Below, one piece after another: positions 19,664 to 62,119 of a DNA stretch of 64,000 bases. How positions within the stretch are numbered: position 1 is the first letter of the stretch; each line of letters starts with the position of its first letter. The DNA is from Octopus sinensis (taxonomy: Eukaryota). The notes beneath the pieces are model-generated. The model made no database searches. It had not been told where the DNA came from and saw only the letters and a list, made by a program, of their open reading frames with translations. The position numbers and the translations under genes were made by a program. Where the stretch lies: positions 18,476,001-18,540,000 of the forward strand of contig NC_043020.1 in assembly GCF_006345805.1 (NCBI RefSeq), in the 5' to 3' direction.

Positions 19664-19717
19664 TATCAAGCCAGTTTATGGCGCACAACACCCACCACGT
19701 ATTGAACGACCTATCAG
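19664..19717 (+). CDS. TBC1D22: TBC1 domain family member 22 (Rab-GAP), exon 2: (S)IKPVYGAQHPPRIERPI(S)
   Basis: Pyrimidine tract + TAG acceptor, GTATGT donor, 54 nt, phase 2-2. IKPVYGAQHPP matches the conserved N-terminal motif of TBC1D22A/B (IQPVYGAQHPP). Confidence 0.9.
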
Positions 19718-20504
19718 GTATGTATACAAATTGAGTTGTTTATTTTCACGAGAAGCTGATTTGTTTTTATAATGAATGACATTACTGCCTTTTCTTTTTT
19801 TTTTTAAATCTTTTCAAAGAAAATACTTTAGTTGCATATGAATAGGGTCCAAATAAATTGGTTTTTAGAAAACCTTTGATAGTATATATCCTTTGATATT
19901 TACTTTATCACCATCATCATTCTTTAACATCTGTTTTCCATGCTGACAATGTTTGACCAGAACTAGTAAGCAAGAGTGCTTCACCAGGCTCCAGTCTGAT
20001 TTAGCTTGGGTTCTACGACTGGATGCCCTTCCTTACACCAACCACTTAAGTGTGTGCTGGGTGCTTTTAACATGGCACTGGTACTTAACTTCATTTGAAA
20101 ACATGTCTTTACCAGGACAGGATGTATTCGTATGAGATTACAGGTATACTGTTCTATCAAAGGATTTCTAAAAAGCGATGGAGAAAGTCAATTACATTTA
20201 CCCCAGTGTGTAACTAGTACTTTTTTTATTGACCCCAAAAGGATGAAGGCAAAGTCGACTCTGGCAGAATTTGAACTCAGAATGTAAGGATGGACGAAAT
20301 GCCGCTAAGCATGTTGCCTGGCATGCTAACGACTCTGCTAGCTCACTACCTTAATAGTAATAATAATGATGATGGTTTCAATTTTGGCACAAATTTATTG
20401 ATCCCCATAGGATGAAAGGCTAAGTTGATTCTGGTAGCATTTGAACAGACAAAATGCCACCAAGCATTTTGCCCTACACACAATTCTGCCATCTCACTGC
20501 TTTA

Positions 20505-21050
20505 AGATGATAATAATCAGACAGTGACTCTCATGGCTTTTGATCTTAATTGATTGGAAGTGTTATCATGTACATTGTTTTGTCTTGGTATGAAAGATGG
20601 ACTACAGCAAACATTCTGCTCAATACCACTAGTTTGTCAGTTGTTTGACCGTAACCAGTTGAGCATGTCCCTTGGTGGCTGATGATATGTGCATCTCTGA
20701 TCATGAGCAGATGTAGTGGGGGAGCATCATAGCCATGTATTGAGAGGAATTCTTTGGGATTTGGAGAAAACACTTCTGGAAACATTGGTGTTTTGTTCGA
20801 CATCCTTAACTCTTATTCAGAGACCTTTTGAGCGGGATGGGCTACTCGAGCTGAAGAAAATTTTGAGCTACACCTGCAAGGTCATGCACTTGAAATGAGA
20901 TCACCATGTCATGCACACATGGTTGTGATGCATGTTCCTGGTGTACTCTTATCAGAGGGGTAGTCATGATGGGTATACTGGGCTTCATATATTTTACCCC
21001 AGTGTCACTTCGATGACATACACTGCCCTCTCACTCAGTAGTAGTAATAA
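20505..21050 (-). repeat. Unclassified ~520-bp interspersed repeat
   Basis: Opposite-orientation copy at about 41787-42250 and partial copy at 43062-43270 (GATCAGAGATGCACATATC..CAGCCACTAAGGGACAT..CAAATCTGTGGTATTGAGCAGAAT). Confidence 0.7.
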
Positions 21051-22911
21051 TAATGATGCTTTCAAATTTTGGCACAAGGCCAGCAATGTCAGGGGAGGGA
21101 TAGGTTGATTATTTTCACTGGTTTCTGTTATTGGGGAATAGTCATGTTGGGCAAGGAATTCAGGGGTTTAGATGATCATACAAACCCATTATTTATTTTT
21201 AAGGAGGGTACATCTTCTATGGCCTCTTTATAAAATTGCTAAGTTATGAAACATATGTGTAAACACACATGTGGCTGAGAATCTGCTTTTCAATCACATG
21301 GTCTCCAGTTCAGTCCCATCACATAACACCTTGGTTGAGTGTCTTTTATTGTAGCCCCAGGCTGGTCAGTGCCTGGTAAGCATATTTGTTAGTTGGAAAC
21401 TGTAGAAAGCATGTGTGTGTGTATTTACGCACCTATGGAAACAACGCTGAATGACAAAGAGTGAACTTTTTTTTAAATTCCGTGTCAGTGAACTGCCTCC
21501 TAATTCTGCTCTTTTGAAGATGTGTGGAATAATCTTGGGGAAAAAATCACTTTGAAGTTGGTACCCCAGCATGGCCATAGTCTAATGCCTGAAACAAATA
21601 AAGATACTTCTGGGCTAGACAATACAAGATCACATCAGAAGTGACTGTTAGATTGACAGATATGTATTTCACTGTTTTTGCAGCTTTGCAGTGTATTTTT
21701 ATCACTTCCAAAACATCAGATCAACTAGTCTGGAGTATAAAGGGAGAAGCATAGAGTTTTTTTCATTCTAGATCTGCTTCCATTGTATAATTCAAATTTT
21801 GTACAAACCACAACTATTTAAGTAAAGAGCCAAAATAATTACAAGAAGTGCAAAGTTTCAAAATAATCCTTTCCGCTATAGACACAAGGCCTGCAATTTT
21901 GGGTGGGGGCAGGCTAGTTGATTACATTGACCTCAGTGCTTGACTGGTCCTCACTTCATTGACTCTGAAAGGATAAAAGGCAAAGTTGACCTCAGCAGAA
22001 TTTGAACCCAGAATGTAAAGATAGGAAATGCCTCTAAACATTTTGTCTGGCGTGCTAACGATTCATAGCAATCAGTGATAAAATTTGTATGTTCTGGCTT
22101 CTTTAATCTTGAATGGTGAGAAACATTTGAGAACCATGTACTTTATATAATTAAATGAAAGCTTCTTAATTGTGAAAGTTTTGGTTAAATAATAAACTAT
22201 CAGTACTAACTCAATATGTTAATAGTAACTTAACTATCGTGTTTTTGTACAGATGGAGTCTCTGAGTAATTTACCTCAGCAATTTGTTGCTTATGTTTAG
22301 TTTGTCCACTAAGTTGATTTATTGATTCAGTCTCCCCCTGCCCCACTACACACGTATGATCTTTTATCCGGATAATAAACCAGTAACTGAATTGTTTAAA
22401 TTACAGTATTGATAGATAAATATCTACAACTGAAAGGTTCTCAAGAAGTTTTGATTTAATTATACAAAGTTAATGTTTTTCATTATTCTCGGCTGATGAA
22501 ACCAGAATGTACAAGTTCTGTCACTGATTACTAAGCAAATTAGAAAATACTCTTTTTATGGTTATTTTGAAATTTTTGCTCTTCCCGTAATTATGTTGAT
22601 TGTTTATATGGACAGTTATGGTTTATACAAAATCATGTACAATAATACATTATATATTACTCAGTAGAAATACAGGTTGTATGCAAAATGAAATTAGTTA
22701 TACATCCATTGCAAATATGTTTATATTGTGTAGTTACATAGCAACAAGATTTGTTTGAGGTGTTGGTGACTATAACAGCTTATAGTGGAAAATGCAATTA
22801 ATATATGTGCACACGAGCAAAGCTACATAGTAACGGGAATTTCTTTCTAATATTAGTGGTTATGGTTGTTAAGTAGTGCAAAAATATATCCAAATACTCA
22901 CCATACCTGTT

Positions 22912-23128
22912 CTATATTTAAGAGATGAGGAATTATGTACATTATTTACATTAGACAGATATTTGTCCTCATCTTGTTTGTTGTTAACACAATGTTTCGG
23001 CTGATATACCCTCAAGCCTTCATCTGGTGTCTTGGGGAAATTTCGAACCTGGGTTCTCATTCCTAAGCTGAAACATTGTGTTAACAACGAATAAAATGAG
23101 GACAAATATCCGTCAAATGTAAATAATG
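22912..23128 (-). mobile_element. 217-bp Penelope-like insertion with 63-bp inverted repeat and 15-bp TSD
   Basis: TSD CTCACCATACCTGTT at 22897-22911 and 23129-23143; inverted arms 22940-23002 and 23066-23128. The minus strand encodes PDEG..PKH-like text typical of GIY-YIG element ends. Confidence 0.6.
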
Positions 23129-23257
23129 CTCACCATACCTGTTGGTATTGTAGTTAATTGTACAAAATGTATTCAAGTACTTGACCACATCATCAATATC
23201 ATTGTTGTATTAACATAGACTTTTTCATGCATAAGGAGTAGACAACCATCCTATATA

Positions 23258-23620
23258 TAGGAGTGGCTGTGTGGTAAGTAGCTTGCTTACCAACCACATG
23301 GTTCCGGGTTCAGTCCCACTGCGTGGCACCTTAGGCAAGTGTCTTCTACTATAGCCTTGGGTCGACCAAAGCCATGTTAGTGGATTTGGTAGATGGAAAC
23401 TGAAAGAAGCCTGTATTATATGTTATGTATGTTTGTGTGTGTGTTTGTCCCCCCAACATCGCTTGACAACTAATGCTTGTGCGTTTATGTCCCTGTAACT
23501 TAGTGGTTTGGCAAAAGAGACCGATAGAATAAGTACTAGGCTTACAAAGAATAAGTTCTGGGGCCGATTTGCTCGACTAAAGGCGGTGCCACAGTCAAAT
23601 GACTGAAACAAGTAAAAGAA
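23258..23620 (+). mobile_element. SINE family 1
   Basis: Full head, body and tail. Confidence 0.85.
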
Positions 23621-23636
23621 AAAATGAAAGTAAAAG

Positions 23637-23676
<40 letters not shown>

Positions 23677-25329
23677 GATATATTAGTAGTGCAAAATACA
23701 TCCAAATACTACCCCATATGTGTATTTATTAGTTGTACAAAATGTACTCAGATTCTCACCATGTACATAATTATTATAGTTGGGGTTATAAAATACATTC
23801 AGCTCCCATATAGGTATAGAAAATTTTTATTCTAGTTATTCATTTGTTAACCATTTGGTGGATATTCAGTTAAATAATTCTACCAGTTATATAACTGAAT
23901 GAGTGTTGGGATAAGCCTCAAATTTCATACGTGTCTCTTCTATATAATATTTCAATGTGTATTGCCATCTGTTTCAAAAGTGATGTCTTTGTTTTGGTTT
24001 TTTTGTCTTTATTTTTCTCCAAATAAAACTTATTGATTGACATGATAGAGATCAATATTTACACAGGTGAAAAAGAATTAGTATTTTGTATCTAACAGCA
24101 TTATGTAACTGTTTTGATTACTAGTTGCCTAAGACTGCCCCTGGTTCCGTGATTTTAAACTTACTGTTTTAAAAGTAATCTGAAACTTTCCATTGAAATT
24201 TCTGTGTTAATTTATGGTTCATACTCAGTTTGATAATGACAATGTTCTTTTACCAAAATTCTTCATTATTTTCAAAATTAATTGTAACAAAAGCATGGAA
24301 GACAGACATTAAACGATGATGATGAAAAGCTATGCATTTCAGTAGAAATTTAGTAACAAAAAAAGGGTTAATGTAATTCCGACATTATATACACAAGAAA
24401 TTTAACATGTGTATGTCTCAAAGGAGAGAGTGTCGTGGAGTTCAGTTACATCCAACAAACACTAAAGTTTTTCCCAAAATCCAGGGTTTTTATAACTGCT
24501 CAACTTGACTTAAAAGAATCGAAATCCATTACAAATATTCTTTACGTATCTTTTTAGAATCCTTATTTGAGCAGTTATATTAACCAATGGAAAAAACGAA
24601 AATAATTACTCTTCGGCAATACGATATTACGTCATATTGCCGATTCGCACTTTATTTCAAAAATGGCTACTTGTTACATGTATGACAAAAAGAGAGTTTT
24701 CTATATGGTTGCTTGACCTGCTTGTAATAAGTTGAAGCTCTATCAAATGACACTTAGAAAATGAAGCTACACAATGTTGTCATGGGTCCATAAAAAGGAA
24801 TATCAGATGTTTTAGCTCTGCCTATTTAGTGTCACTGATTCAATGCTGACTTATTTGTCATTAGCCATTTTAATGTTTCTCTCCCATCCATTCTCCCTGC
24901 TTATGTGTATGAACATATTTCTTTTTTATCTGTATGTGTACATTTTTATGCATGCACACCTGTGTGTTTGTGTGAATGCATATGCTTGCCTCCAGTACCA
25001 GAAAGTAGTCACCAAATCAGGTTCTGTGTCCAGTCAGCCATGCCAAATCACCAGCAGCCAAACAGCCATGCCCAATTGTCTCGTTCTGTACAAAAATGAC
25101 AGGATGGTTATGGCTGGAACGTCTTTAACAATAGTTCTAACCAGTCAATGCCTACTTGTATCAGATGAAATGCTTATTCACTAAAGAGACTTGAAAAAAC
25201 TTGTGTCATTGTTATTGCAGTTGAATTCTTCTTCTTCAAATGTTTACAACAGAGACGCTGTTCACAATTTTGTGGCAGGAAACTCTGGTTCTTTTTAGTT
25301 TTGGTAGCTCATCAATTTCTTGATATGTG

Positions 25330-26060
25330 TCTCTGCCAGTAACATCAATATAACTGAGTGGTTGTCTTTCTCTATTAGACATCTCCAAGATAAGACATCT
25401 AAGGTCTTGTAGTTCACTACAATAGCAGTCAGTAGCCAGTAAAGCCTAGCTTGTATTGAGCAATAGTAGTAGAGGTAGATTGAGTAAGTCCCATAAATCT
25501 CTGCATTGGTCTTATATTTATGCCATGAGATGTTTTGGGGTCTTCATGAGAAACCTTGTACCTGCACCAGTTGAATTAGTTCAACTGCAATGAGAGTCAC
25601 CAATAATGAAAAGTAGACATTCAGTTGTTAAATCATAACTGCTTGGTGTGTCCATGTCTCCTTCAATCTGAATCACTTGTTAGACCTTCAGACAGCACGC
25701 AGAAGAGGACCAGCCAACTGATTGGTGTAAAGTCACTCACAGACACATTCAAGCTTCTGGTTCATGGCCCACAGCCATGTTGTTTTTTTGTCTCTCTGAC
25801 TTTTCTTCTGATTATAAATGGGTTTGTTTGCTCCTTGGGGGTTGTCTTGGCTTATGCTACCTTGTCTCAAGTACTTCCATCCCACTTATTTCTTCATTTA
25901 CCTATCATCCTTAAGTTGTACACCCACCCCAGCTTTGTACTAACCATTAGGTTTTAGTCCTCCCTTCACAGAACATCAGCTCTCTGGAATTCCTTTCTCA
26001 TTCATGCCTTTCCTGCAGGTGTTGATCTACAATGGTTCAAGAGGTTTAAAGATGGTTTGC
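25330..26060 (+). mobile_element. Highly decayed L2/Crack-like LINE 3' end
   Basis: Residual peptides QKRTSQLIGVKSLTD and RTSALWNS..HAFP..DLQWFK resemble the C-terminus of L2/Crack-type ORF2; many disablements. Confidence 0.45.
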
Positions 26061-26792
26061 AAAAGCCCTTCTTACAGACCCAGCAAATCATAAGATAGAA
26101 GCTTAATTCTGCTCCACTATCTAGATTTTTCTTTTCCTTTTTTTTTTTTTTTTTGGTTTTATATTTTTATTTCTGCTGTGATCAGTTTTATCAATATTTC
26201 CATGTTTGAAAAATAAACACCAGTAAATTTGTCCTTCTCTCCAACATCCTTCCCACCTTCCTTGGTATCCCCCCCCTCTTCTATGATTGGTCAAGTACTT
26301 TAGTAAGAAATTATTATCGAACAAAAATGTCTTGCAGTATTGACTTATAAGCCTTTACATTTTGTGTTCAAATCCTGCGAAGGTCAACTCAGACTTTCAT
26401 CCTTCTGAGGTTTATGAGACAGAGTAGCAGCCAAGTACTGGGGTTGATGTGATAAGCTAGACCCCTCCCTATCTTAATTGCTGTCCTTATGCCTCCTAAA
26501 TGAGAAACAATTACTAATATAATTAACTCCCTCCCACTAAATTTGTAGCCTATGTTAGAAAATATTATTATTTAATAGCAGATACTAAGGTGATGAGCTG
26601 ACAGAATCGTTACTAGCTTAGCGGCATTTCGTCCATCTTTAAATTCTGAGTTCAAATTCTGCTGAAGTCGACTTTACTTTTCATCCTTTTGGGGTCAGTG
26701 AAATAAATATTACTTGAGTACTGGGCTTTATGTAATCGATTTCTCTCTCTCCGAAATTGCTGGCCTTGTGCCAAAATTTGATATCATTTGAT

Positions 26793-26970
26793 AGCATGGC
26801 CTAGTGGTTAGAGCAGCGGACTCGCGGTCGAGGGATCGCGGGTTCGAATCTCAGACCGGGCAATGTGTGTGTTTATGAGCGAAACACCTAAACTCCACGC
26901 GGCTCTGGCAGAAGGTAATGGCAAACTTCTGCTAACTCTTTTGTCACAACTTTCTCCCACTCTTTCCTCC
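26793..26970 (+). mobile_element. tRNA-derived SINE, family 3 (young, CpG-rich)
   Basis: A box TGGCCTAGTGG and B box GGTTCGAATC followed by a non-tRNA body; related copy at 6600-6800. Confidence 0.75.
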
Positions 26971-27166
26971 TTCAAACTTTGCTTTTCATACATTTATTCA
27001 AACCCAAAAGAATTCCTCTGAGCACACTGCAAATCTGTGGTCCTTAGCAGAGTACTTGCTGAATCTGTCTGAAATGTGATGGCAAACAGGTCAGTTTCAA
27101 AACATTGATGTCCACATCACAAAAGCAATGTTTGAAGGGAATAGTAGTCATTTGATTTCTAGATAG

Positions 27167-27568
27167 GTGCAGGAGTGGCTGTGTGGTAAGTAGCTTGCTA
27201 ACCAACCACATGGTTCCAGGTTCAGTCCCACTGCGTGGCATCTTGGGCAATGTCTTTTGCTATAGCCCCGGGCCGACCAATGCCTTGTGAGTGGATTTGG
27301 TAGACAGAAACTGAAAGAAGCCTGTCGTATATATGTATATTTATATATATATGTATGTGTGTGTATGTTTGTGTGTCTGTGTTTGTCCCCCTAGCATTGC
27401 TTGGCAACCGATGCTAGTGTGTTTACGTCCCCGTCAATTAGCGGTTCGGCAAAAGAGACCGATAGAATAAGTACTGGGCTTACAAAGAATAAGTCCTGGG
27501 GTCGATTTGCTCGACTAAAGGCGGTGCTCCAGCATGGCCGCAGTCAAATGACTGAAACAAGTAAAAGT
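27167..27568 (+). mobile_element. SINE family 1 (young, CpGs retained)
   Basis: Full-length copy. Confidence 0.85.
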
Positions 27569-27947
27569 AAGTAATAGAAGTAAATAGGAAATAACACTTA
27601 AAAATACACAAAAAGTAATGGGAAGTAAATAAAATAATAAATTAGTTTAACTAATTACACCATATGAAACAAGCATAATTTATTATCAGCCAATATATCA
27701 CCCTACTTTCCATAGTCTAGATTGCATTTGAAGCAGTCAACTTGTCAGCTGTCAGTGATTCTGAAGTTTGATATTTTGTCAACGGTTCTTTGTAACAAGG
27801 TGTTCTTCATATCAGTGGTTCTCAACTGGAGTCCTTATGGCCCTTGGGGGTCTGTATGGTGCTTGGGGGTCCACATAAGATTTTGTCATTAAAATATGAA
27901 TTTTAATAATTGGCTATACTTCTACAATACACAAAATATTTTTTTTT

Positions 27948-28295
27948 ATCTTTTACTTGTTTCAGTCCTTAGACTGTGGACATGCTGGGGCACTGCCTTG
28001 AAGAATTTTTAGTCGAATGAATCAACCCCAGTACTTATTTTTTTTATAGCCTGATACTTATTCTGTTGGTTTCTTTTGCTGAACTGCTAAAGGGATATAA
28101 ACACACCAGCACCTGTTAAGTGGAAGTGGGGGTACAAATACTGACACACACACATGCACACGAGAGGCTTCTTTCAGTTTCCGTTTACCAAATCTACTCA
28201 TAAGGCTTTGGTCAGCTTGAGGCTGTAGTAGAACACTTGCCCAAGGTGCCACACGAGGGACTGAAACTGGCACTATGTGATTGGGAAGCAAACTT
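27948..28295 (-). mobile_element. SINE family 1 nested in a hAT-like MITE
   Basis: Reverse copy; MITE sequence precedes it (from about 27811) and resumes at about 28297. Confidence 0.7.
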
Positions 28296-28756
28296 AATTC
28301 CTAACAATATTTAATTATAAAAGTATAATAGGATTTTTTAAACATGGAATGACCATGAGGGCCCACCTGAGTTAAAGAGGAATCAGAGGGGTCCACTCAC
28401 AAGGCTTTGGTTGGCTTGAGGCTGTAGTTGAAGGCACTTGCGTAAGGTGCCATGCAATGAGAATGAACCTGGAACCATGTGGTTGGGAAGCAAGCTTCTT
28501 ACCACCCAGCCATGCCTGCACCTGTAACTTTGCATTTTTATAGGTTGGTATGTTGCCCCTATATAAATGCTTTTCTACCTCTGGGAAGAAGTGATCCCTT
28601 TTAGTCTGGCCTCTATGTTTTGACCTGTCCATCACGGGAGGCCCTACAAGGAGTTTGTGATCTGCTGGCATAGTTCTTAGGGACAGTGAGGCACACAAGC
28701 CACCATGCTACAACAAGGACTGGAATTTATGATGGAACTGCTTATACTATATTGAC

Positions 28757-29310
28757 AGGGCTGGTGTTAGGAAGTGCAGGTCCCAATTAGAGAATTGTAG
28801 TTGGAGCCCTCTACTCTACAAAAGCTGAAGATTGATGTTTTAAGCTTCATGTAGTATACCAGTCCCAGCCAAAGAATGTTGAGGGCTTGAGGCTCAACCA
28901 TTAGCCACAATGATATATTAAAAATTCATCATAGCATCCTTCAGTTGTGTGTGTGGGGCCCTCTCTTGATGCAGGGCCCAGTTTAAACGTGTCTATCTAA
29001 TTGGTTTAATTGTTTGTGTGTGCAGGGCCAGCACTAGGAAGTGCTGGGCCCAATTAGAGAATTGTCAGTAGGGCCTTCTTCTCTACAAAAGCTAAAGATT
29101 GATGTTTTATGCTTCATGTAGTACACCAGTCCCAGCAAAAAAGTGTTGAAATTTTGAAGCTCTACCATTAGCCACAATGATGTACTAAAAGTTTATCATA
29201 GCATCCTCTTCTTGAGCGTGTGCATGAGACCTTCACTTGGCTCTCTCTTGTGCATGAGGTCCTCTACTTTGAACAAATTTAATTGGCTTATAACCAGCTC
29301 TGACTATGTA
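28757..29310. repeat. Two tandem ~270-bp copies of a MITE-like element
   Basis: Units start CAGGGCTGGTGTTAGGAAGTGC (28757) and CAGGGCCAGCACTAGGAAGTGC (29023) and share CCAATTAGAGAATTGT..CTCTACAAAAGCT..CCATTAGCCACAATGAT. Confidence 0.7.
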
Positions 29311-30112
29311 CCAATTAGTACTACTCAAAGTTTATGTCACTAAAATTACTGGTACCTTATTGTATTCAGCAGTCAAGTTCTTTAACAGAACATCAATGAA
29401 GTTACTCTGCTTGGAGAATGTAAATAGTGAAAAGGGAACTCTTCTAGTATCTCATAGTAAGAAGAAATAGTCAGCATTTTAGGAAGGACTCTTAGTTCTC
29501 AATTATACTATATTCTTACTGGTTTCAGTCTTTTTACTATGACCTTGCTGGTACACTGTCTTCTGGGATTTTAGTTTATATTGATCTTTGTGATTAATTT
29601 GATGTTTGTTTTATTGGTCTTTATTGGTTGGTATAAAGTGGCCTAACTTGGCGCTTATGCACCACATTAGTATTTTCATCAGATACAACTACACACATAC
29701 ACACACACACATGCATGTGCACATGCATCTGAAAAGTGTTTTACAGTTTCTGTTTTCAAAATTTCATTCACAAAGCACAGGTTTTTCAACCACATGGTCC
29801 CAGACCAACCAAAACCTTACAAGTGAATTTGGTAGACAGAAATGTAATGTCTGTTTTCCATGCAGGCCTGGGTTGGATGGCTTGGCAGGAACTGGCAGGG
29901 CCAGGGTCCACACCAGGTTCCATAGTCTGTCTTGTCTTGGTTTCCATAGCTGGATGCCCCTCCTAACACCAACAACTTCACAGAGTGTACTGGGTGCTTT
30001 TTATGTGTCACCAGTACCCACATCAATGCTTTTTATGTAGCATCTTGGTTTTAGGATCTCAATTGTAGTGGGCAGGTCTTCTTGCTATAGCAATGTGCCT
30101 CATATCTCTTTC

Positions 30113-30500
30113 TCTCTTACTTGTTTCAGTCATTTGACTGGCCATGCTGGAGCACTGTTTTTAATCGAGCAACTCGACCCAGGACTTATTCTTTGTAAGC
30201 CCAGTACTTATTCTGTCGGTCTCTTTTGCCGAACTGCTAAGTGATGGGGACATAAACACACCAGCATCAGTTGTCAAGCGATGTTGGATGGGACAAACAT
30301 ACACGCACACACACATATATATATATATACATATATACAACGGGCTTCTTTCAGTTTCCGTCTACCAAATCCACTCATAAGGCTTTGGTTGGCCCAAGGC
30401 TATAGTAGAAGACACTTGCCCAAGGTGCCACACTATGGGAATGAACCCGGAACCATGTGGTTGGTAAACAAGCTACTTACCACACAGCCACTCCTGCGCC
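30113..30500 (-). mobile_element. SINE family 1
   Basis: Full-length reverse copy. Confidence 0.85.
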
Positions 30501-31638
30501 TATGTCATACATATGTGTCATATATATGTATATGTACACCGTTCCAACTTCTCTTTCATCAGCTTTATTGTGTCTCATTTTCCACTTGTCAAATCACACC
30601 AGACATTACCCAATTCTGCTTTTCTAGAACTGTAACTCTCAGCAAGTCTCTCTTTTCCCCACATTCCCCCTACTGGTAGTAATCTGTATAAGATCAAGTT
30701 ATCAGTCTGGGATGTCTTCTATGGATATCTGACACTCCCTCTTTAACCTGGTTTAAATTTTATAAAACAAATGCACTTTTTTGAAAATTGGCTCTGATAT
30801 ATTTGGATATGGAATAAAAATGAATCAAAGTAGACACTGAATTTATAAATCCTTCTCCCTGCATATATATATCCATACACCTGCACATCATATGAATGCC
30901 TCTATATACATATACATGAAACATAATTTCTGCAATATACTTAAAACTACTCTAATTTTACTTATTTTATTTTCTATATGTTTCCAACCTTTTCCAATAT
31001 TGGTTTCAAATTTAGGCACAAGGCCAGCAATTTTGGGGAAGGAGCTAAGTCAATTAGATCAACTCCAGTGCTCAGCTGGTACTTATTTTATTGATCCTAA
31101 AAGGATAAGAGATGAAGTCGACCATGGCTGAATTTGAACTCAGAACATAGACAGACAAAATGCCACTAAGAATTTTGCCCAGCTTGCTAATCATTCTGTC
31201 AGCTTGCTGCCCTAACCTTTCCCAATATTATTGTTTGTCCTAAGTTGTTTTGTCTTTAGTATTTATATTCCTCCCCCGCTCTCTCTCACACTATCTGTGA
31301 GTGTGTGTTTTTGTGTGTGTGTCACTGAGCTGACTGTTATTACAAGGGAGATAATAATGTCTTCATGATAGGTGTGATTTGGATTTGAAATTAAGGAAAG
31401 GAAGATTCATAGAATATAAACATTCCGTTTTTCTTTATTGTTTTTTTTAGTTTGTTTATTAAAAATTTCATAAAATTTCTGGTCAGTGGTAATCATGTAT
31501 AACACTATTTAATTTTTTTGTCATTTTTATTTTATCAGAAACCTTTTTTTTTTTTAGAAACACACACACACCCATCCATCCATGCCTACTTCTTGTTAAT
31601 ACTTTTTATATTTTGCCTCTCTTGTTTTCCTAATTTAG

Positions 31639-31883
31639 TAACCCAGGAACACCAAAGAAAGATGACAAGCTAAAAAACAAGACGAAGGACTCCTTCCGGG
31701 ACTTTGAAAATGAGACATCAGATGCTTGGGACGATGGCGATGATGATCTAATATTGATGGCCACTGTTCAAATGTCCTTAAAGGATGTCCAGTCGACTGC
31801 ACGTGCTGTACTTGACAATCACAGTAAACAGTTTCAAGCTCTTAACGGTACCTCACAGGGATCTCCAGTCAAATCCCCATCAG
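31639..31883 (+). CDS. TBC1D22: TBC1D22 exon 3: NPGTPKK...SFRDFENETSDAWDDGDDDLILMA...ARAVLDNHSKQ...SPS
   Basis: TAG acceptor, GTTGGT donor, 245 nt, phase 2-1. F.DFE.ETSDAWD.GDDD and VL.NHS match TBC1D22A/B. Confidence 0.92.
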
Positions 31884-31972
31884 GTTGGTGCTTCTGCACA
31901 ATTTTTGCTTTTAGACCAATTTTATTTATAGTTTTAGACTAATTTTATTAATAGATCAATTATGTGTATGTA

Positions 31973-32625
31973 TCAGGTCATCCCATAAGTTCTGTCCGAT
32001 TTTACCTTTTTTAAAATTGAATGGAATTTAATAGTATTTTAGAATGTCTAATGGAATTAAAAATTATTTTTATGCATTTGTGTACATTTAAACTAATTAA
32101 ATATTATTTTACAGAATAAGGGAATTAAAATTTCTTTGATTAAAACCCTTTCTAACATGGAAGTATCCAAAGTGCATTTGAGGCACATAATGCTTTATGA
32201 GTACAAAAAAAGGAAACTCTGCAGCCGAAGCGACTCGAAACATACACTCAGTTTATGGGAAAGAATGCTTGAATGAAAGAACTTGCAGAAGATGGTTTGC
32301 AAAATTCAGAAATGGAGATTTCAGCCTTGAAGATGAAGATCGAACAGGACGTCCAGTTGAGTTTGATGATAAGCTCCTTGAGGGATTACTTGAAGAAAAT
32401 CCTGCATTATCAGTTGAAAAATTAGCAATAAAGCTTAGTTCAAACCATACAATTGTTCATCGTCATCTTCAACAACTTGGAAAGGTTCCTAAACTTTGAA
32501 AATGGGTGCCTCATGAATTGTCTGAAAGCAACCACAAATCCCAAGTTGACATCTGCTCTTCTCTCCATTCTCGCGAACTCATTTCACCCTTTTTGGATAG
32601 ACTTGTGACTGGTGACAAAAAATGC
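31973..32625 (+). mobile_element. Mariner transposon, 5' half (left TIR + N-terminal transposase), disabled
   Basis: TA|TCAGGTCATCCCATAAG left end. ATG at 32157 MEVSKVHLRHIMLYEYKK, frameshift, GNSAAEATRNI...WFAKFRNGDFSLEDEDRTGRP, in-frame TGA, then the WVPHEL motif and LVTGD, then truncation. Confidence 0.9.
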
Positions 32626-32778
32626 TGATAGGAAATGTTTTCATTTATTAACTTGATCAGCTCAGGCTGGGAATGAACTCATGTCTTTATTTTTGGCTTT
32701 TGTTTAGATTTCTGTATCTTTCTTAAATAATTTTGTTTCTTTCATTTGATTTGATTTCTCTTCTTTTCTTTCCCACAG

Positions 32779-32979
32779 GATGTCACATGACTGCAATTCC
32801 GTCAGCCATTTCTTTAGGTGCTGGACCGGGTGTAGGTGTGCGTCTCAACAGTCACTGGCAGCCTCCTAGAATTACGCCTTTGCGGTTTGGTCAGCCATCA
32901 GTGCCAGATCGAGAATCTGCTAAATTAGAAAAATTTCACACTTTACTAACATCACTAACATCATCAAATGCAGGTTTAG
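32779..32979 (+). CDS. TBC1D22: TBC1D22 exon 4: GCHMTAIPSA...PDRESAKLEKFHTLLTSLTSSNAGL
   Basis: CAG acceptor, GTGAGA donor, 201 nt, phase 1-1. RE..KLEKF..LL matches TBC1D22B (REKTRLEKFRQLL). Confidence 0.88.
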
Positions 32980-34549: not shown

Positions 34550-34620
34550 AAAAATTACGTAAACTCAGTTGGTCTGGCATCCCAAAATCAGTGAGACCCA
34601 CAGCATGGAAAATTTTATCT
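34550..34620 (+). CDS. TBC1D22: TBC1D22 exon 5: EKLRKLSWSGIPKSVRPTAWKILS
   Basis: TAG acceptor, GTAAGT donor, 71 nt, phase 1-0; start of the TBC domain. Confidence 0.95.
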
Positions 34621-39267: not shown

Positions 39268-39422
39268 GTCAGTTTCAGTTTACAAAATAAACTCCACAAA
39301 GAAAGGAAAGCTTGAAAATTATATAGTTATATGTTTTAGTGAAAAATGTGTGTAAAATAGTGGCTTTTCTGTATTGAACAGTCACAATCATATCTCTAGC
39401 ACTACAGATATGTGATTAGATT

Positions 39423-40329: not shown

Positions 40330-41300
40330 TTATTATTAAAGTGGGTAGCTTGCAGAATTGTTAGTATACCAGACAGAATGTTTAGCAGTATTTCATGACT
40401 TTACATTTTGAGTTCAAATTCCACTGAGGTTGACTTTGCCTTTCATCCTTTCAGGGTTGATAAATTAAGTACCAGTGAAATACTGGTTTTCAAGTAATCC
40501 ACTAGTCCCTTCCCCCAAATTTCAGGCATTGTGCCTATAGTAGAAAGGATTATTATTAAGGCAGCAAGTTGGCAGAATCATTGGCATGCTGGGCAAAATG
40601 TTTAACATTTTGTCTATCCTTACGTTCTGAGTTCAAATTCTGCTGGGGTCAACTTTGTCTTTCATCCTTTTGAGGTCAATAAAAAAAGTACCAGTGAAAC
40701 ACAGGGATCAATGTAATCAGTTAGTCCCCCTCCCCACAAATTTCAGGCCTTGTGCCTATAGCAGAAAGGATTATTATTTTGAGCAAATTTCACCAATATC
40801 AACTTTGCCATTTATCCTTTTGAGGTTGAGAAAATAACTATCAGATGAACGCTGGGGTTGATGTAATTGACTTAACCCCACCCCCAACATTGCTGGCCTT
40901 GTGCCAGAATTTAAAACCATTATTACTTATTTTGAAAATAGTGATTAAATTTTAATAAAAGACACTTTTGTCTTGCAGAACTCCAGAATTTTTTTTTATA
41001 GAAATCTGGTGTTTCGCCTAACCTACTTAGGATACCACTGTCTTTTAGTTATCACCAAAATATACTATGGAATTCTATACTAGTATTTACAGTATTCTAG
41101 TTGTGAAATAGTATAATGACAATGTGTAACTGTCAGTTTTATTTGGAGAAATATTTTAATTAATTGATATTGTTAATTACACTGCTTTACAAGATTGTTG
41201 TGGATGTTGTAGCTGTTTGTATTTGCTTTCAATGAGTCTTGTTTTTTTAATTGTTGTCACTATGATGTTTTTAGCATTATTTCCATTATTATTTATGTTG

Positions 41301-41336
<36 letters not shown>

Positions 41337-41430
41337 TTCTTTATTTTTCTTCTTTCTTAAACTTTTCTTGATTTTCTCGCTGAGTGTTTTCCGTACACCT
41401 GGGTCAGAGAAGCTCATTGTATGCATTCCC

Positions 41431-41461
<31 letters not shown>

Positions 41462-43060: not shown

Positions 43061-43490
43061 TTCCTTTCAACACATGGCTATGATGCTCCCCCACTACTTC
43101 TGCTCATGATCAGAGATGCACATATCATCAGCCACTAAGGGACATTGTCAGCTGGTTAAGGTCAAACAAGTGACAAGTAAATCTGTGGTATTGAGCAGAA
43201 TATTTGGTGTAGCCCATCTTTTATACCAAGACAAAACAATGTACATGATAACACTTCCAATCAGTTAAGATATTATTATTATTATTATTATTATTATTAT
43301 CATTATTATTATTATTATTATTATTATTGCTTGTATATGTTAAGTATGTAAGTTTTATTTTATGTTGAAATTTAAAATACTTTTACATCTGTCTATATTT
43401 GCACCATTTTTGATGTGCTGCATCTTTGGAAGTAAAGTCTTTATTTTGTTTTTGTTTTGTTTTCTTTCTCTTCAATGTTCCTGATTTTAG

Positions 43491-43556
43491 ATTCACATAG
43501 ACATTCCCCGAATGAACCCTTTAGTCCCTCTGTTTCAACTGAAGGTAGTTCAGGAA
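43491..43556 (+). CDS. TBC1D22: TBC1D22 exon 7A (arginine-finger exon, ancestral-like): IHIDIPRMNPLVPLFQLKVVQE
   Basis: Long pyrimidine tract + TAG acceptor, GTAAGT donor, 66 nt, phase 0-0; closely matches TBC1D22B IHIDIPRTNPLIPLFQQPLVQE. Confidence 0.95.
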
Positions 43557-43982
43557 GTAAGTATGCCCCCAACAAAGAGCCAGTTCAACAAAATGCAGCA
43601 ATTTGGGGCCTTTCAATCATATTTTCACCAGGTCTGTAGACAAGCAAGTTCAATAGTTTAGTAAAAGTCTAATAAAAAAGCAGCTAAATATTTACACAGC
43701 AAGCTTGAATTTCCAGTTTCTTTGTTACTGAAATATTGAAGTTTCAGGGCTTTTTGTTATGCTACACACACACACACACACACACACAAGGTTAGACGTA
43801 CAACAGCTGCATGTGTATTTACGGTTCCACATAGACTATCAGCCCCCAGTCAACTGCCAGAAATGCGACATGGTTGCTACTGAACTTAGTGGTATTATTA
43901 GTTATGATATACAGAGGAAATATTAGAAAAAGTATGGTAAACTGCATCATGTGTGTTTATCATACTTTTTTCTTCCTCTCTT

Positions 43983-44019
<37 letters not shown>

Positions 44020-44058
44020 TATATATATATACTTTATTTCAAAGCAGCAGAAATTCAA

Positions 44059-44107
44059 CAAAACCTGTTACTCGGAGTTTCACGTTCCCGTTCGTCGGAC
44101 AGTTTTG
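44059..44107 (-). ncRNA. Minimal type I hammerhead ribozyme motif (Penelope-associated type)
   Basis: Minus strand CAAAACTGT-CCGACGA-ACG(GGAA)CGT-GAAA-CT(CCG)AG-TA-ACAGGTTTTG: stems I, II and III and a GUA cleavage triplet are present; the core has U4C. Confidence 0.6.
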
Positions 44108-46068
44108 TTAAAATTCCACCTTTTTTCCACCTTGTTTCACATTTATGTGTTTACTCCGGTATTATATATACTACTAATATAGGATGAAGTTTTTTTACAG
44201 AAAAAAATTTCATCAAAAAGTGGCAGCGTATTAGAATACCTTTAAAGTTTAAAATTATAAACAACTTATAAACAAGGGCAAAAGAAAATTAGTTCCATGC
44301 CAATATGCTGATAACAGACTTTTAAATCGTCCCACTACAGAAATACATTGTGCTGAAATCGAGGAAAGCTAGTCAACAGAATTTTAAAAAAAGTTTGTTA
44401 TTTCTATATTGAATCAATTTCGGAATTAATCTCATGGAATGATGTTGAGGTGAATATAGGTGTAGATATTTATGAATATACTCAGAAAGAATTCCTGGAG
44501 TAATTTAGCTACAGGGAAGAACGTTGCCCTTCTCACTTTTAAAAAAAATATATCTTAATATATCTCTTAGTCATTTTGTACCATATTAGCTATACTGAAA
44601 ATAGTTTTAGAACATTTTTATTTTTAACTAAAGTGTTACATGCTGGCATCACATAAAAAGCACCCATGCTGGGGCCATATAAAGCACCCAACACACTCTG
44701 TAAAGTGATTGATGTTAGGAAGGGCCATCCAGCTGTAGAAACCATGCCAAAATGGACAACTGGGACCTGGTGCAGCTCTAGCCTGCCAGCTTCTGTCAAA
44801 CTGTCCAACACATGCCAGCATGGAAAATGGATGTTAAACGATGATGTTGTGACAGCTATTCACTGGAAATTCACTTACAAAAATATTTTAAGTAAAATAA
44901 TAAAAACATTAATTTTGATCAACTAAATTCCTGTTTGATTTTAGCTTTTAATTTTAATGTGTATTTTTTTTTTTCAAGTTGATATGAAACTGTGTATAAA
45001 TGAAAACCCAGTTAAGATGTTACTTTGGTAGAATTTGGTTGAAGGGAAAGACACAAGTTGCTGCATTTTGCTGTCTAACTAGCTAAATATTTTTCTGCTG
45101 TACCCCTTGATCCCTACCCAGCATGCTGCACTATGGATGTCTTAGCACCCTGCCCTTGCTAGTTCAGATGCTACATTTGAATCAAGGTGGCTGTGCAATT
45201 TCTTTTGACATTTTAACATTTATATTTGGGTGTATTTTGTTGGCTTTTTCTGTTGTTTTAATTTTTGTTTTTCATTGCTGGGGCTTTGTTTTATCTTCTC
45301 TCTTAATAACTAACATGTGTTTGTCTTTTTTTCAGGCCATATGAGAAAAGTTAACATTTTCGAGAAACCAGACGGGCTTTGTCTAAACTTAGAATCAGAT
45401 TTTGGTTTTTAAAAAAATTATCTGTTACCCCTGATATTGTTAGTAACACCTTTCCATCTTTTGGTATTGATTAACAGAGCTGTAAATATTTTACAGTTTA
45501 TGTATGTTGTTACAGCTAGCATAATACTGGAAATTGAATGTAGCTGTTTAGCACTGGTGATTTATATATGCTTATGATTAATTAATCATTCGTCAAGACT
45601 AATAATTGGTCCTTAAATTTGTTGATGTAAACTTTTAAAAACACATTGTTATAAATCAATACGCTGATACTTCTTCAGCTTGTACATCATTCCATGTCAT
45701 GCTCTATAATTTTATCTGTGGCTACTCGTTTCAAAGAGCAGGCTTCCACTGTAATTTGTGCAGATGTGTGGATTTTTAGATTTATCTAACCTATGTTGAT
45801 ATACAAATGAGGAATGAATTGTTTTTTAAAATGTTCGTAAAAAAAGAAATTCTTAAAAAAAATTCTTTAAAAAAAAACAGCAAGCAAACAAACCTTTCTT
45901 TCCCAAATAAATAATAATAAAATATTTTCTAATTTTGTAAGTTTTAGTCTGGTTTGTCGTTTCCATGTTGACTTCACTCCTACTCAACGAGTGTAACACC
46001 GTAGCTCTTTGATGGTTAGTAGTAGATTACTGTCTTCTTCAAAAACACCCTGCTCCCTGTTTTTGCAG

Positions 46069-46134
46069 ATTCTTAAAGATATCCCTCGAATGACTTCTGT
46101 TGCACACTTGTTCCAGCAGAATGCCGTGCAGGAA
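46069..46134 (+). CDS. TBC1D22: TBC1D22 exon 7B (duplicated, divergent arginine-finger exon): ILKDIPRMTSVAHLFQQNAVQE
   Basis: TTTTTGCAG acceptor, GTGAGT donor, 66 nt, phase 0-0, open frame; 12/22 aa identical to 7A including D-x-x-R. Confidence 0.88.
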
Positions 46135-52109: not shown

Positions 52110-52144
<35 letters not shown>

Positions 52145-53465: not shown

Positions 53466-53586
53466 ATATTTGAAAGAATCCTGTATATATGGGCCATCCG
53501 CCATCCAGCCAGTGGTTATGTACAAGGAATTAATGATCTTGTGACGCCGTTTTTTGTTGTCTATCTTTCTGAGTACATTAGCAATG
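53466..53586 (+). CDS. TBC1D22: TBC1D22 exon 8 (glutamine-finger exon): IFERILYIWAIRHPASGYVQGINDLVTPFFVVYLSEYISN
   Basis: TAG acceptor, GTATGT donor, 121 nt, phase 0-1; YxQ motif GYVQG. Confidence 0.97.
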
Positions 53587-56872: not shown

Positions 56873-57055
56873 ATATAGAAGTGGAGAACTGTGACTTAAG
56901 CAAACTCTCAATTGACACATTAAACATCATCGAAGCCGACAGTTTCTGGTGTACAACGAGATTACTGGATGGTATCCAAGACAACTACACATTTGCTCAA
57001 CCTGGTATTCAGATGAAAGTGAATGCTTTGAAAGAGTTAGTGAAACGGATAGATG
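56873..57055 (+). CDS. TBC1D22: TBC1D22 exon 9: DIEVENCDLSKL...IIEADSFWCTTRLLDGIQDNYTFAQPGIQMKVNALKELVKRID
   Basis: CAG acceptor, GTAAGT donor, 183 nt, phase 1-1; EADSFWC..LLDGIQDNYTFAQPGIQ is conserved. Confidence 0.97.
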
Positions 57056-59066: not shown

Positions 59067-59194
59067 TTCCATTATATAAACATTTAGAAAAACATAATGT
59101 AGAATTTCTCCAATTTGCCTTCCGATGGATGAACAACTTGCTGATGAGAGAAATTCCTTTGCGCTGTACCATTCGTTTGTGGGACACTTATCAG
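59067..59194 (+). CDS. TBC1D22: TBC1D22 exon 10: VPLYKHLEKHNVEFLQFAFRWMNNLLMREIPLRCTIRLWDTYQ
   Basis: CAG acceptor, GTAAGC donor, 128 nt, phase 1-0. Confidence 0.97.
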
Positions 59195-60763: not shown

Positions 60764-60859
60764 GCAGAAATAAATGGTTTTGCAAATTTCCACCTTTATC
60801 TCTGTGCTGCATTTCTTACACGATTTTCCATTGATATTCAACGAGAAAAAGATTTTCAG
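60764..60859 (+). CDS. TBC1D22: TBC1D22 exon 11: AEINGFANFHLYLCAAFLTRFSIDIQREKDFQ
   Basis: TAG acceptor, GTTTGT donor, 96 nt, phase 0-0; FHLY.CAAFL is conserved. Confidence 0.95.
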
Positions 60860-61984: not shown

Positions 61985-62119
61985 GGTATACTGATGTTTC
62001 TCCAAAACCTTCCCACTCACCACTGGCAGAACGAAGAAATTGGCGAGTTATTGGCTGAGGCATTTAAGCTGAAGTATATGTTTGCTGATGCTCCCAACCA
62101 TTTAGTTCAGAAGTCATGA
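61985..62119 (+). CDS. TBC1D22: TBC1D22 exon 12 (last coding): GILMFLQNLPTHHWQNEEIGELLAEAFKLKYMFADAPNHLVQKS*
   Basis: TAG acceptor; TGA at 62117-62119; LQNLPT.HW..EEI..LLAEA..LKYMFADAPNH matches the TBC1D22B C-terminus. Confidence 0.97.
   Translation, partial: GILMFLQNLPTHHWQNEEIGELLAEAFKLKYMFADAPNHLVQKS

What the first reader, a model, noticed from the sequence alone, without database searches (positions are those of the whole stretch)
43491..46134. Catalytic arginine-finger exon of TBC1D22 is tandemly duplicated: candidate mutually exclusive exons 7A/7B
Seen: two 66-nt, phase 0-0 exons 2.5 kb apart, each with canonical splice sites, encoding IHIDIPRMNPLVPLFQLKVVQE and ILKDIPRMTSVAHLFQQNAVQE. 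They share 12/22 residues, and 7 of those 12 codons differ synonymously, which points to an old duplicate kept under purifying selection rather than a decaying copy. Known: in TBC Rab-GAPs (Gyp1p paradigm) IxxDxxR supplies the arginine finger and YxQ (exon 8) the glutamine finger. Inference: including both exons keeps frame but would duplicate an active-site helix, so they are probably alternatives. One gene would then make two GAPs with the catalytic D/R intact but different neighbouring residues (HI to LK, NPLVP to TSVAH), possibly changing Rab specificity or kinetics by tissue. I know of no description of this for TBC1D22, but cannot search.
Basis: partly seen in the sequence, partly recalled or inferred. 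Interest (0 to 1): 0.9.

Follow-up and report, generated by a model that had tools for sequence, protein, structure and literature searches.

The report
Alternative catalytic exons in octopus TBC1D22
An octopus Rab-GTPase-switching enzyme (TBC1D22) carries two old copies of the small exon that encodes its catalytic arginine and normally uses one or the other, a choice kept across several invertebrate phyla; a similar exon pair exists in fish, lamprey and amphioxus but seems never to have been described in a paper.

Summary
Exons 7A (43491-43556) and 7B (46069-46134) are both 66 nt, phase 0-0 and AG/GT-flanked. They share 12/22 residues, far above any other six-frame match in the window. The gene is the Octopus sinensis/vulgaris TBC1D22 orthologue.

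The mutually-exclusive reading is supported:
- Public isoforms carry 7A only or 7B only in three Octopus species.
- RNA-seq-assembled transcripts from cuttlefish, a second probably cephalopod group and mussels carry one or the other, never both.
- Both exons and about 70 nt upstream are 100% identical between O. sinensis and O. bimaculoides, where deep introns are 91% identical.

7B is not a relic. Its type (ILKDIPRMTSLAHLFQ..) is nearly invariant in bivalves, gastropods and cephalopods. Related I-x-K-D-x-x-R-M exons occur in a brachiopod, nemerteans and annelids.

Amphioxus, lampreys and fish TBC1D22A have their own pair for the same exon, in the opposite order.

Caveats: some genome-derived models include both exons or neither. 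Because each exon is 66 nt, nonsense-mediated decay cannot remove such products. I found no RNA structure that would enforce exclusivity. A functional difference between the isoforms is inferred, not shown. The isoforms are in RefSeq/ENA; I found no paper describing them.

The parts
34550..34620 (+). TBC1D22 exon 5. Starts with 2 nt that complete a codon and encodes KLRKLSWSGIPKSVRPTAWKILS, which contains the RxxxW TBC motif (RPTAW).
   Evidence: 100% match to O. sinensis XP_029650354
39139..39267 (+). Exon 6, constitutive, 129 nt, phase 0-0 (GYLPVDCDRRQ...HQDTFRQ). Its donor at 39267 serves either 7A or 7B.
43415..43490 (+). Intronic flank upstream of 7A, including the long U-rich tract. 100% identical to O. 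bimaculoides.
   Evidence: perfect block 43415-43572; upstream 100 nt is 99/100 identical against 0.912 in deep introns
43491..43556 (+). Exon 7A, the canonical (ancestral-type) arginine-finger exon: IHIDIPRMNPLVPLFQLKVVQE. The Arg-finger codon CGA is at 43509-43511.
   Evidence: identical peptide in cuttlefish and in a second, probably cephalopod, transcript cluster
45997..46068 (+). Intronic flank upstream of 7B. 100% identical to O. bimaculoides.
   Evidence: perfect block 45997-46178; upstream 100 nt is 98/100 identical
46069..46134 (+). Exon 7B, the lophotrochozoan B-type arginine-finger exon: ILKDIPRMTSVAHLFQQNAVQE. The Arg-finger codon CGA is at 46087-46089.
53466..53586 (+). Exon 8, constitutive, 121 nt (IFERILYIWAIRHPASGYVQGINDLVTPFF...). 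The YxQ glutamine finger is at 53517-53525. Its acceptor at 53466 receives either 7A or 7B.
56873..57055 (+). Exon 9
59067..59194 (+). Exon 10
60764..60859 (+). Exon 11
61985..62119 (+). Exon 12, the last coding exon; stop codon TGA at 62117-62119.
19665..32978 (+). Span holding upstream coding exons found only as tblastn matches: about 19665-19715, about 31634-31900 and about 32772-32978. Exact boundaries were not determined. The first coding exon was not found in the window.

Best explanation
7A and 7B are an old tandem duplicate of the exon encoding the IxxDxxR arginine-finger motif of the Rab-GAP TBC1D22, together with the roughly 15 residues after it. The gene splices exon 6 to one of the two and then to exon 8.

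This yields two GAP isoforms of equal length. They keep the catalytic Asp/Arg and the C-terminal ..LFQ..VQE. They differ at type-specific positions: H2>L, I3>K, N9>T, P10>S, I/V12>A, P13>H.

7A is the ancestral bilaterian form. 7B is a derived form maintained at least across cephalopods, gastropods and bivalves. It is probably related to the I-x-K-D-x-x-R-M alternative exons of brachiopods, nemerteans and annelids.

Shown here: the exons, their homology, their conservation, and single-inclusion isoforms in annotation and in transcript assemblies.

Inferred: (1) the choice is regulated, most likely at the two 3' splice sites, whose upstream flanks are the most conserved intronic flanks measured in the gene; (2) the two isoforms differ in catalytic-site geometry or Rab recognition, hence in substrate preference or rate.

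How exclusivity is enforced is unknown. Steric hindrance, U2/U12 incompatibility and nonsense-mediated decay are excluded by the anatomy. I found no competing RNA structure.
For: Homology and anatomy.

Gene identity. PF00566 scores 153.4 bits for the A isoform and 154.2 bits for the B isoform.

Single-inclusion isoforms:
- Three Octopus species have A-only and B-only pairs.
- Transcript-derived ORFs in the cuttlefish cluster: P0303/P0304 A-only, P0305/P0306 B-only, with paired lengths 489/489 and 536/536 aa.
- A second, probably cephalopod, cluster: P0123 A-only, P0307/P0308 B-only.
- Mytilus: P0325/P0326 B-only.
- No transcript-derived ORF has both or neither.

Conservation of the B type: 52 proteins and 23 distinct exon peptides start ILKD. 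Positions 1-4, 7, 8, 12-14 and 21 are invariant.

Selection between octopuses: 66/66 nt identical in each exon. Perfect blocks of 158 and 182 nt compare with 0.912 deep-intron identity (P about 5e-7 and 5e-8). Upstream flanks are 99/100 and 98/100, against 85-96 for the ten other exons measured.

Same arrangement (canonical exon, then derived exon) elsewhere: Lingula L008, Capitella L003, and in-tandem gene models from Tubulanus, Nucella, Candidula and Mytilus coruscus.
Against: RefSeq O. sinensis X1/X4, the cuttlefish model CAE1321148 and several other genome-derived models contain both exons. O. vulgaris CAI9740082 contains neither. I could not count reads, so the frequency of these forms is unknown.

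No docking/selector pairing was found. The best duplex (-38.9 kcal/mol) lies within the dinucleotide-shuffle null (mean -34.2, sd 2.9, min -43.5). The longest complements between introns are only microsatellites and SINEs.

No direct evidence exists that the isoforms differ in activity. Pfam scores are equal. The AlphaFold2 comparison was inconclusive (B model pLDDT 57.6).

The chiton genome lacks a B exon, so the pair is not universal in molluscs.
Confidence: 0.8

Rival explanations
1. 7A and 7B are two independently regulated, in-frame cassette exons rather than a strictly exclusive pair. All four combinations (A, B, A+B, none) would be made at appreciable levels, and exclusivity would be only apparent.
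For: Both exons are 66 nt, so A+B and skipped transcripts stay in frame and escape nonsense-mediated decay. Annotated models with both (O. sinensis X1/X4, 559 and 504 aa) and with neither (O. vulgaris CAI9740082, 460 aa; amphioxus CAH1264617) exist. No enforcing mechanism was found.
Against: Every double-exon protein seen comes from a genome annotation. None comes from a transcript assembly, where only A-only or B-only ORFs of equal length occur. A+B would place two catalytic motifs in tandem inside a compact helical domain. Skipping both removes the arginine finger.
Confidence: 0.13
2. 7B is a non-functional relic or pseudo-exon that annotation pipelines include by homology.
For: None beyond its divergence from 7A (10/22 residues differ).
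Against: The B-type peptide is near-invariant across three molluscan classes. B-only ORFs occur in RNA-seq assemblies of cuttlefish, mussels, oysters and snails. 7B and its flank show 182 nt of perfect identity between two octopus species. The reading frame, splice sites and catalytic D/R are intact.
Confidence: 0.02
3. Both exons are constitutively included, so the real protein carries a tandem duplication of the finger segment.
For: Both-included gene models exist in O. sinensis, cuttlefish, Nucella, Candidula, Mytilus coruscus, Tubulanus and Owenia.
Against: Equal-length single-inclusion isoform pairs occur in at least eight genera. Transcript assemblies show single inclusion only.
Confidence: 0.03

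Closest known systems
Mutually exclusive exons that arose by tandem exon duplication (for example Dscam1, 14-3-3 zeta, tropomyosin, FGFR2 IIIb/IIIc, CaV1.2 8/8a, ATE1 7a/7b; reviewed in PMC5740500 and PMC9741552)
   Same: Adjacent homologous exons of equal length and phase. Single inclusion gives isoforms of equal length that differ in one structural segment. The pair is ancient and its flanking introns are strongly conserved.
   Different: No competing RNA structure, steric constraint, U12 site or frame-dependent nonsense-mediated decay could be shown. The exon length is a multiple of 3, so aberrant combinations are not cleared by decay. The swapped segment carries a catalytic residue of a Rab GAP; I found no description of such a case.
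Chordate TBC1D22 / TBC1D22A alternative exon pair (found here in public annotation: catfish L007, teleost X1/X2 pairs, lamprey X1/X2, amphioxus X1/X2)
   Same: The same exon of the same gene family is tandemly duplicated. Both copies are AG/GT-flanked and phase 0-0. Isoform pairs use one or the other, including in transcript assemblies.
   Different: The order is reversed: derived copy upstream, canonical copy downstream. The derived copy is 21 aa in vertebrates and keeps H-I-D and Pro10 (IHIDIPRMSPE.L.LQPKVTE). It lacks the Lys3 signature of the lophotrochozoan B type, so an independent origin is likely.
Gyp1p / TBC1D22A / TBC1D22B TBC-domain Rab GAPs (PDB 1FKM, 2G77, 2QFZ, 6D0S; dual-finger mechanism, Pan et al. 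2006 as summarised in PMC5902227)
   Same: RxxxW, IxxDxxR and YxQ motifs are all present. The TBC domain aligns end to end at E=3e-145. Both isoforms score alike against PF00566.
   Different: The solved proteins come from genes that have, or are shown with, a single version of the finger segment. Here one gene encodes two.

Membership tests
TBC-domain Rab GAP, TBC1D22/Gyp1 subfamily | RabGAP-TBC domain (Pfam PF00566) above the curated cut-off | tested here: met
   153.4 bits (7A isoform) and 154.2 bits (7B isoform), against a cut-off of 25.2.
TBC-domain Rab GAP, TBC1D22/Gyp1 subfamily | IxxDxxR arginine-finger motif | tested here: met
   I-H-I-D-I-P-R in 7A and I-L-K-D-I-P-R in 7B.
TBC-domain Rab GAP, TBC1D22/Gyp1 subfamily | YxQ glutamine finger and RxxxW motif | tested here: met
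   YVQ in exon 8 (53517-53525) and RPTAW in exon 5.
TBC-domain Rab GAP, TBC1D22/Gyp1 subfamily | Closest solved relatives are TBC1D22A/B and Gyp1p | tested here: met
   6D0S 3e-145, 2QFZ 1.6e-139, 1FKM 7e-87, 2G77 2.7e-86. The next family (TBC1D15) reaches only 2.8e-20.
TBC-domain Rab GAP, TBC1D22/Gyp1 subfamily | GAP activity on a Rab substrate, for each isoform | not testable with these tools
   Needs recombinant protein and GTPase assays.
Mutually exclusive exon pair from tandem exon duplication | Adjacent exons, homologous, same length and phase, canonical splice sites | tested here: met
Mutually exclusive exon pair from tandem exon duplication | Mature transcripts contain exactly one of the two | tested here: inconclusive
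   A-only and B-only isoforms occur in three Octopus species. Transcript assemblies of other cephalopods and mussels show one exon only. Genome-derived models with both or neither also exist, and no read counts were available.
Mutually exclusive exon pair from tandem exon duplication | Both copies maintained by selection | tested here: met
Mutually exclusive exon pair from tandem exon duplication | A known enforcing mechanism: steric hindrance (very short intron) | tested here: not met
   The 7A-7B intron is 2512 nt in the window and 118 nt in Capitella.
Mutually exclusive exon pair from tandem exon duplication | A known enforcing mechanism: U2/U12 splice-site incompatibility, or frame-shift plus nonsense-mediated decay | tested here: not met
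   All sites are GT-AG with gtaagt/gtgagt donors. Both exons are 66 nt, so all combinations stay in frame.
Mutually exclusive exon pair from tandem exon duplication | A known enforcing mechanism: competing docking/selector RNA pairings | tested here: inconclusive
   nothing above the shuffle null. Only two closely related genomes were available for covariation.

The most novel reading that the evidence does not exclude
The arginine-finger exon of TBC1D22 is a recurrent, or very ancient, hot-spot for mutually exclusive splicing across Bilateria. One pair (canonical, then I-x-K-D type) occurs in molluscs, brachiopods, nemerteans and annelids. Another pair (derived, then canonical) occurs in amphioxus, lampreys and fish TBC1D22A.

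The two versions would give the GAP two catalytic-site flavours with different Rab preference or rate. In the tetrapod 22A proteins seen here, mostly amniotes, the two flavours appear to have been divided between the paralogues: 22A keeps the derived exon and 22B keeps the canonical one.
Probability: 0.35. Interest if true: 0.75.

Novelty: new member of a known kind. Interest (0 to 1): 0.55.

Why it matters
TBC-domain GAPs are usually described as having one fixed dual-finger active site. Their specificity is attributed mostly to localisation (PMC5902227). Here a single gene offers two long-conserved versions of the segment around the catalytic arginine. Chordates show the same solution for the same exon.

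This points to the residues next to the finger as a tuned functional determinant of TBC1D22, a Golgi Rab1/Rab33-type GAP. It also gives a natural pair of variants for testing how that segment sets Rab preference or rate.

It is a further example of alternative exons in one lineage paralleling paralogue divergence in another.

On the practical side, several genome annotations join both exons into one protein (Nucella, Candidula, M. coruscus, cuttlefish, O. sinensis X1/X4), and the Capitella model omits a candidate B-like exon. The double-exon models probably need correcting.

Tried and rejected
1. First protein search with exon 6+7B+8 (105 aa). It returned only proteins of 184 aa or less and no exact match, because the tool seems to list hits only up to about 1.75x the query length. 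A 308-aa query found the full-length isoforms.

2. Docking/selector RNA pairing:
- A duplex scan of exon flanks against all three introns gave a best hit of 43577-43630 with 45027-45076 (-39.7 kcal/mol). Both arms are conserved.
- A dinucleotide-shuffle null (mean -34.2, sd 2.9, min -43.5) shows this is not unusual.
- The longest perfect complements between introns in six loci are microsatellites or SINEs.
- A heavier duplex scan of the compact loci timed out.

3. Known splicing-factor motifs in the flanks: no UGCAUG. There are only generic pyrimidine-rich elements and a shared 11-mer of borderline significance.

4. AlphaFold2 of both isoforms. The A model is usable (pLDDT 79.8). The B model is poor (57.6, shallow alignment). 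The apparent helix extension through the B finger is therefore not trustworthy.

5. Idea that the B type is closer to the generic TBC consensus. Pfam scores are equal for A and B in five species pairs, so this is not supported.

6. Short-peptide searches of the PDB with B-type exons: no hits.

7. Literature: TBC1D22 with 'mutually exclusive', MXE or alternative splicing, plus the held supplements of two human MXE catalogues. No description was found. A TCGA SpliceSeq 'ME' event in human TBC1D22A exists, but its exons are not given.

8. Three genomic look-ups failed because only the longest isoform of a gene is indexed.

9. Search for an annelid protein using the Capitella B-like exon: none found, so that exon remains a genomic candidate.
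Full report
**1. The observation**

- 43491-43556 reads IHIDIPRMNPLVPLFQLKVVQE.
- 46069-46134 reads ILKDIPRMTSVAHLFQQNAVQE.
- Each is preceded by a pyrimidine tract ending in AG and followed by GTAAGT or GTGAGT.

They share 12/22 residues and 43/66 bases. Seven of the twelve shared residues use different synonymous codons.

The ungapped BLOSUM62 score between them is 50. The best unrelated 22-mer among 127,870 six-frame positions scores 23 against 7A and 33 against 7B. The similarity is therefore not chance, and there is no third copy.

**2. The gene**

I rebuilt the downstream gene model from homologue matches and splice sites.

| Exon | Coordinates |
|---|---|
| 5 | 34550-34620 |
| 6 | 39139-39267 |
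| 7A | 43491-43556 |
| 7B | 46069-46134 |
| 8 | 53466-53586 |
| 9 | 56873-57055 |
| 10 | 59067-59194 |
| 11 | 60764-60859 |
| 12 | 61985-62119 (TGA stop) |

All boundaries are GT-AG. Exon 6 ends and exon 8 begins on codon boundaries. Either exon 7, both, or neither therefore keeps the reading frame.

Upstream exons were seen only as tblastn matches.

The translation carries RxxxW (exon 5), IxxDxxR (each exon 7) and YxQ (exon 8). It hits human TBC1D22B (6D0S, 3e-145), TBC1D22A (2QFZ) and Gyp1p (1FKM, 2G77).

It is identical to the O. sinensis/O. vulgaris proteins. It differs at a few residues from O. bimaculoides. The window is therefore from O. sinensis or O. vulgaris.

**3. Are the exons alternatives?**

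Public isoforms say yes.

| Species | 7A only | 7B only | Both | Neither |
|---|---|---|---|---|
| O. bimaculoides | XP_014783421 (528 aa) | XP_014783420 (528 aa) | - | - |
| O. sinensis | XP_029650355 (537 aa) | XP_029650354 (537 aa) | X1, X4 | - |
| O. vulgaris | CAI9740083 (482 aa) | CAI9740081 (482 aa) | - | CAI9740082 (460 aa) |

These are annotation products whose read support I cannot see.

Independent support comes from ORFs on RNA-seq assemblies (Logan).
- The cuttlefish cluster has A-only ORFs (P0303, 489 aa, on 19 contigs; P0304, 536 aa).
- The same cluster has B-only ORFs of the same lengths (P0306, P0305).
- A second cluster, probably also a cephalopod, has P0123 (A) and P0307/P0308 (B).
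- Mytilus has B-only transcripts, plus X1/X2 pairs of 489 aa.

Across all proteins collected, every true double-exon sequence comes from a genome annotation. None comes from a transcript assembly.

**4. Selection**

The O. bimaculoides gene (L001) aligns colinearly with the window. Deep-intron identity is 0.912.
- Both exons 7 are 66/66 identical.
- They sit in perfect blocks of 158 nt (43415-43572) and 182 nt (45997-46178).
- At 0.912 per base, a perfect block of that length at a given site has probability about 5e-7 and 5e-8.
- The 100 nt upstream of 7A and 7B are 99/100 and 98/100 identical. These are the highest values among the 12 exons measured; the others range from 85 to 96.
- Downstream flanks are ordinary (about 90%).

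Strong conservation of upstream intronic flanks is the usual mark of a regulated alternative 3' splice site. That reading is inference.

**5. 7B is a conserved exon type, not a decaying copy**

Among homologues, 52 proteins (23 distinct exon peptides) start ILKD.
- Positions 1-4, 7, 8, 12-14 and 21 are invariant. The consensus is ILKDIPRMTSLAHLFQQKVVQE.
- They come from bivalves (Magallana, Pecten, Ostrea, Pinctada, Mytilus, Mercenaria, Dreissena, Mya, Potamilus).
- They come from gastropods (Aplysia, Biomphalaria, Haliotis, Patella, Pomacea, Littorina and others).
- They come from cephalopods.
- Many come from transcript assemblies.

The A type (IHIDIPRMNPLIPIFQQ..) is found in the same genera as equal-length partner isoforms. 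An example is Magallana XP_034305274 (A) and XP_034305273 (B), both 488 aa.

The type-specific positions are 2, 3, 9, 10, 12 and 13: H, I, N, P, I/V, P in A against L, K, T, S, A, H in B.

**6. Beyond molluscs**

| Group | Finding |
|---|---|
| Lingula (brachiopod) | X1 and X2, both 497 aa, carry IHIDIPRMNPLIPLFQQTVVQE or IQKDCNRMVNVLELTREKTVQE. Genomic order is canonical then derived (L008). |
| Nemerteans | Lineus X2 has the canonical exon; X3 has IQKDLCRMSVLTNRRPIEE. Tubulanus X2 has the derived exon only; X1 has both. |
| Capitella (annelid) | An unannotated, AG/GT-flanked, 63-nt phase-0 exon (IGKDVPRMSQIPILHQPIVQS) lies 118 nt after the canonical exon (L003:3383-3445). No protein using it was found. 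|
| Owenia (annelid) | A 20-aa IEKDINRM.. exon is used alone (CAH1784402). It sits upstream of the canonical one in a both-exon model (CAH1784400). |
| Chiton, bryozoan, hemichordate, scorpion | Only the canonical exon. |

All lophotrochozoan derived exons share Lys3 and the loss of Pro10. One origin with later losses is the simplest reading. The Owenia order and the very short sequences leave independent duplications open.

**7. Chordates have their own pair**

- A catfish TBC1D22A locus (L007) has IHIDIPRMSPETLVLQPRVTE (63 nt) followed 2 kb later by IHIDIPRTNPLIPLFQQASVQE (66 nt). Both have AG/GT boundaries.
- Teleost X1/X2 pairs differ by exactly one residue in length and use one exon or the other. 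Transcript assemblies exist for both.
- Lampreys show the same 22/21-aa pair.
- Amphioxus X1/X2 (both 555 aa) use IQVDIPRMNSQLPFFRQSSIQE or the canonical exon. Genomic order is derived then canonical (L009).
- The amniote 22A proteins seen here carry only the derived exon. 22B carries the canonical one.

The reversed order and the different signature suggest a separate origin from the lophotrochozoan pair.

**8. How exclusivity is achieved**

| Mechanism | Result |
|---|---|
| Steric hindrance | Excluded; the intron between the exons is 2.5 kb. |
| U12 incompatibility | Excluded; all sites are U2-type GT-AG. |
| Frame-shift plus nonsense-mediated decay | Excluded; both exons are 66 nt. |
| Competing RNA structures | Nothing above a dinucleotide-shuffle null; only SINE and microsatellite complements. 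|

Exclusivity may depend on trans-acting factors at the two conserved 3' splice-site regions. It may also be imperfect.

**9. What the swap does**

In the usable AlphaFold2 model of the A isoform (pLDDT 79.8), exon 7 forms three elements:
- a coil carrying IxxDxxR and the next four residues;
- a short helical turn;
- the first turn of the following helix.

The B model was too poor to compare. Both isoforms score equally as TBC domains.

The arginine finger reaches the Rab gamma-phosphate, and the N-terminal subdomain that carries it contacts switch I, switch II and the P-loop (PMC5902227). Changing the residues on both sides of the finger, including the loss of two prolines, could therefore alter finger placement or Rab recognition. 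This is inference and nothing here tests it.

**10. Verdict**

It belongs to a well-known kind, mutually exclusive homologous exons. Its isoforms are already in public protein databases, but I found no published description.

Its interest lies in the target (the catalytic segment of a Rab GAP), the depth of conservation, and the parallel pair in chordates.

Noticed in passing
L007:8991-9053 and L007:11124-11189 (catfish TBC1D22A); proteins P0276/P0291, P0282/P0283, P0345/P0346: Vertebrate TBC1D22A has its own tandem pair of the arginine-finger exon: 21 aa IHIDIPRMSPE.L.LQPKVTE, then 22 aa IHIDIPRTNPLIPLFQQASVQE. It is used alternatively in teleosts and lampreys. The amniote 22A proteins seen here carry only the first.
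   Followed up: partly
L009:4308-4373 and L009:4941-5006 (Branchiostoma lanceolatum): Amphioxus also has two alternative versions of this exon: IQVDIPRMNSQLPFFRQSSIQE, then the canonical one. They are annotated as X1/X2 of equal length (555 aa). A third model skips both.
   Followed up: partly
L003:3383-3445 (Capitella teleta): An unannotated, AG/GT-flanked, 63-nt in-phase exon (IGKDVPRMSQIPILHQPIVQS) lies 118 nt downstream of the annotated arginine-finger exon. No database protein uses it.
   Followed up: partly
window 39416-39900, with partners at about 40396-42869 and 48378-49973: A SINE-like repeat lies in antisense orientation just after exon 6. It is absent at this site in O. bimaculoides. 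It is 75-92% complementary to sense copies in the same intron and in the 7B-8 intron. Pairing with the latter would loop out both exons 7. It could also be a double-stranded RNA editing substrate.
   Followed up: partly
window 43764-43788 and 52112-52143: An (AC)n tract 200 nt downstream of 7A is perfectly complementary to a (TG)n tract in the 7B-8 intron (25 bp). The catfish locus has a similar (TG)25/(CA)25 pair bracketing both of its exons. This is probably coincidence.
   Followed up: no
window 43347-43357 and 45937-45947: The 11-mer TGTAAGTTTTA, which resembles a 5' splice site, occurs about 144 and about 132 nt upstream of 7A and 7B respectively. The core TGTAAGTT is conserved in O. bimaculoides at both sites. 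Statistical significance is borderline.
   Followed up: partly
window 35166-36413 (-) and 37467-38615 (-): Two open reading frames on the minus strand inside intron 5 carry reverse-transcriptase-like motifs (LINE fragments). They account for the GC-rich stretch at 34-40 kb.
   Followed up: no
L004:1-175 (Watersipora) and L005:1-52 (Saccoglossus): A ceramide-kinase gene (PH_CERK, DAGK_cat) lies head-to-head immediately upstream of TBC1D22 in both a bryozoan and a hemichordate. From memory, CERK is also the neighbour of human TBC1D22A, which would make this very old microsynteny.
   Followed up: no
proteins P0143, P0160, P0321, P0301, P0247, P0244, P0251, P0310: Several genome annotations join both alternative exons into one protein, duplicating the catalytic motif. 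These models probably need correction.
   Followed up: partly
proteins P0103 and P0201: Two sequences of unidentified origin carry Lys3-type finger segments: ILKDLPRTSPSVHMFQQKHIQD (6-kb NCBI/JGI contig) and IQKDIPRMNPLMPIFQQSVVQE (a transcript resembling the bdelloid-rotifer proteins). Their source organisms and gene structures are unknown.
   Followed up: no
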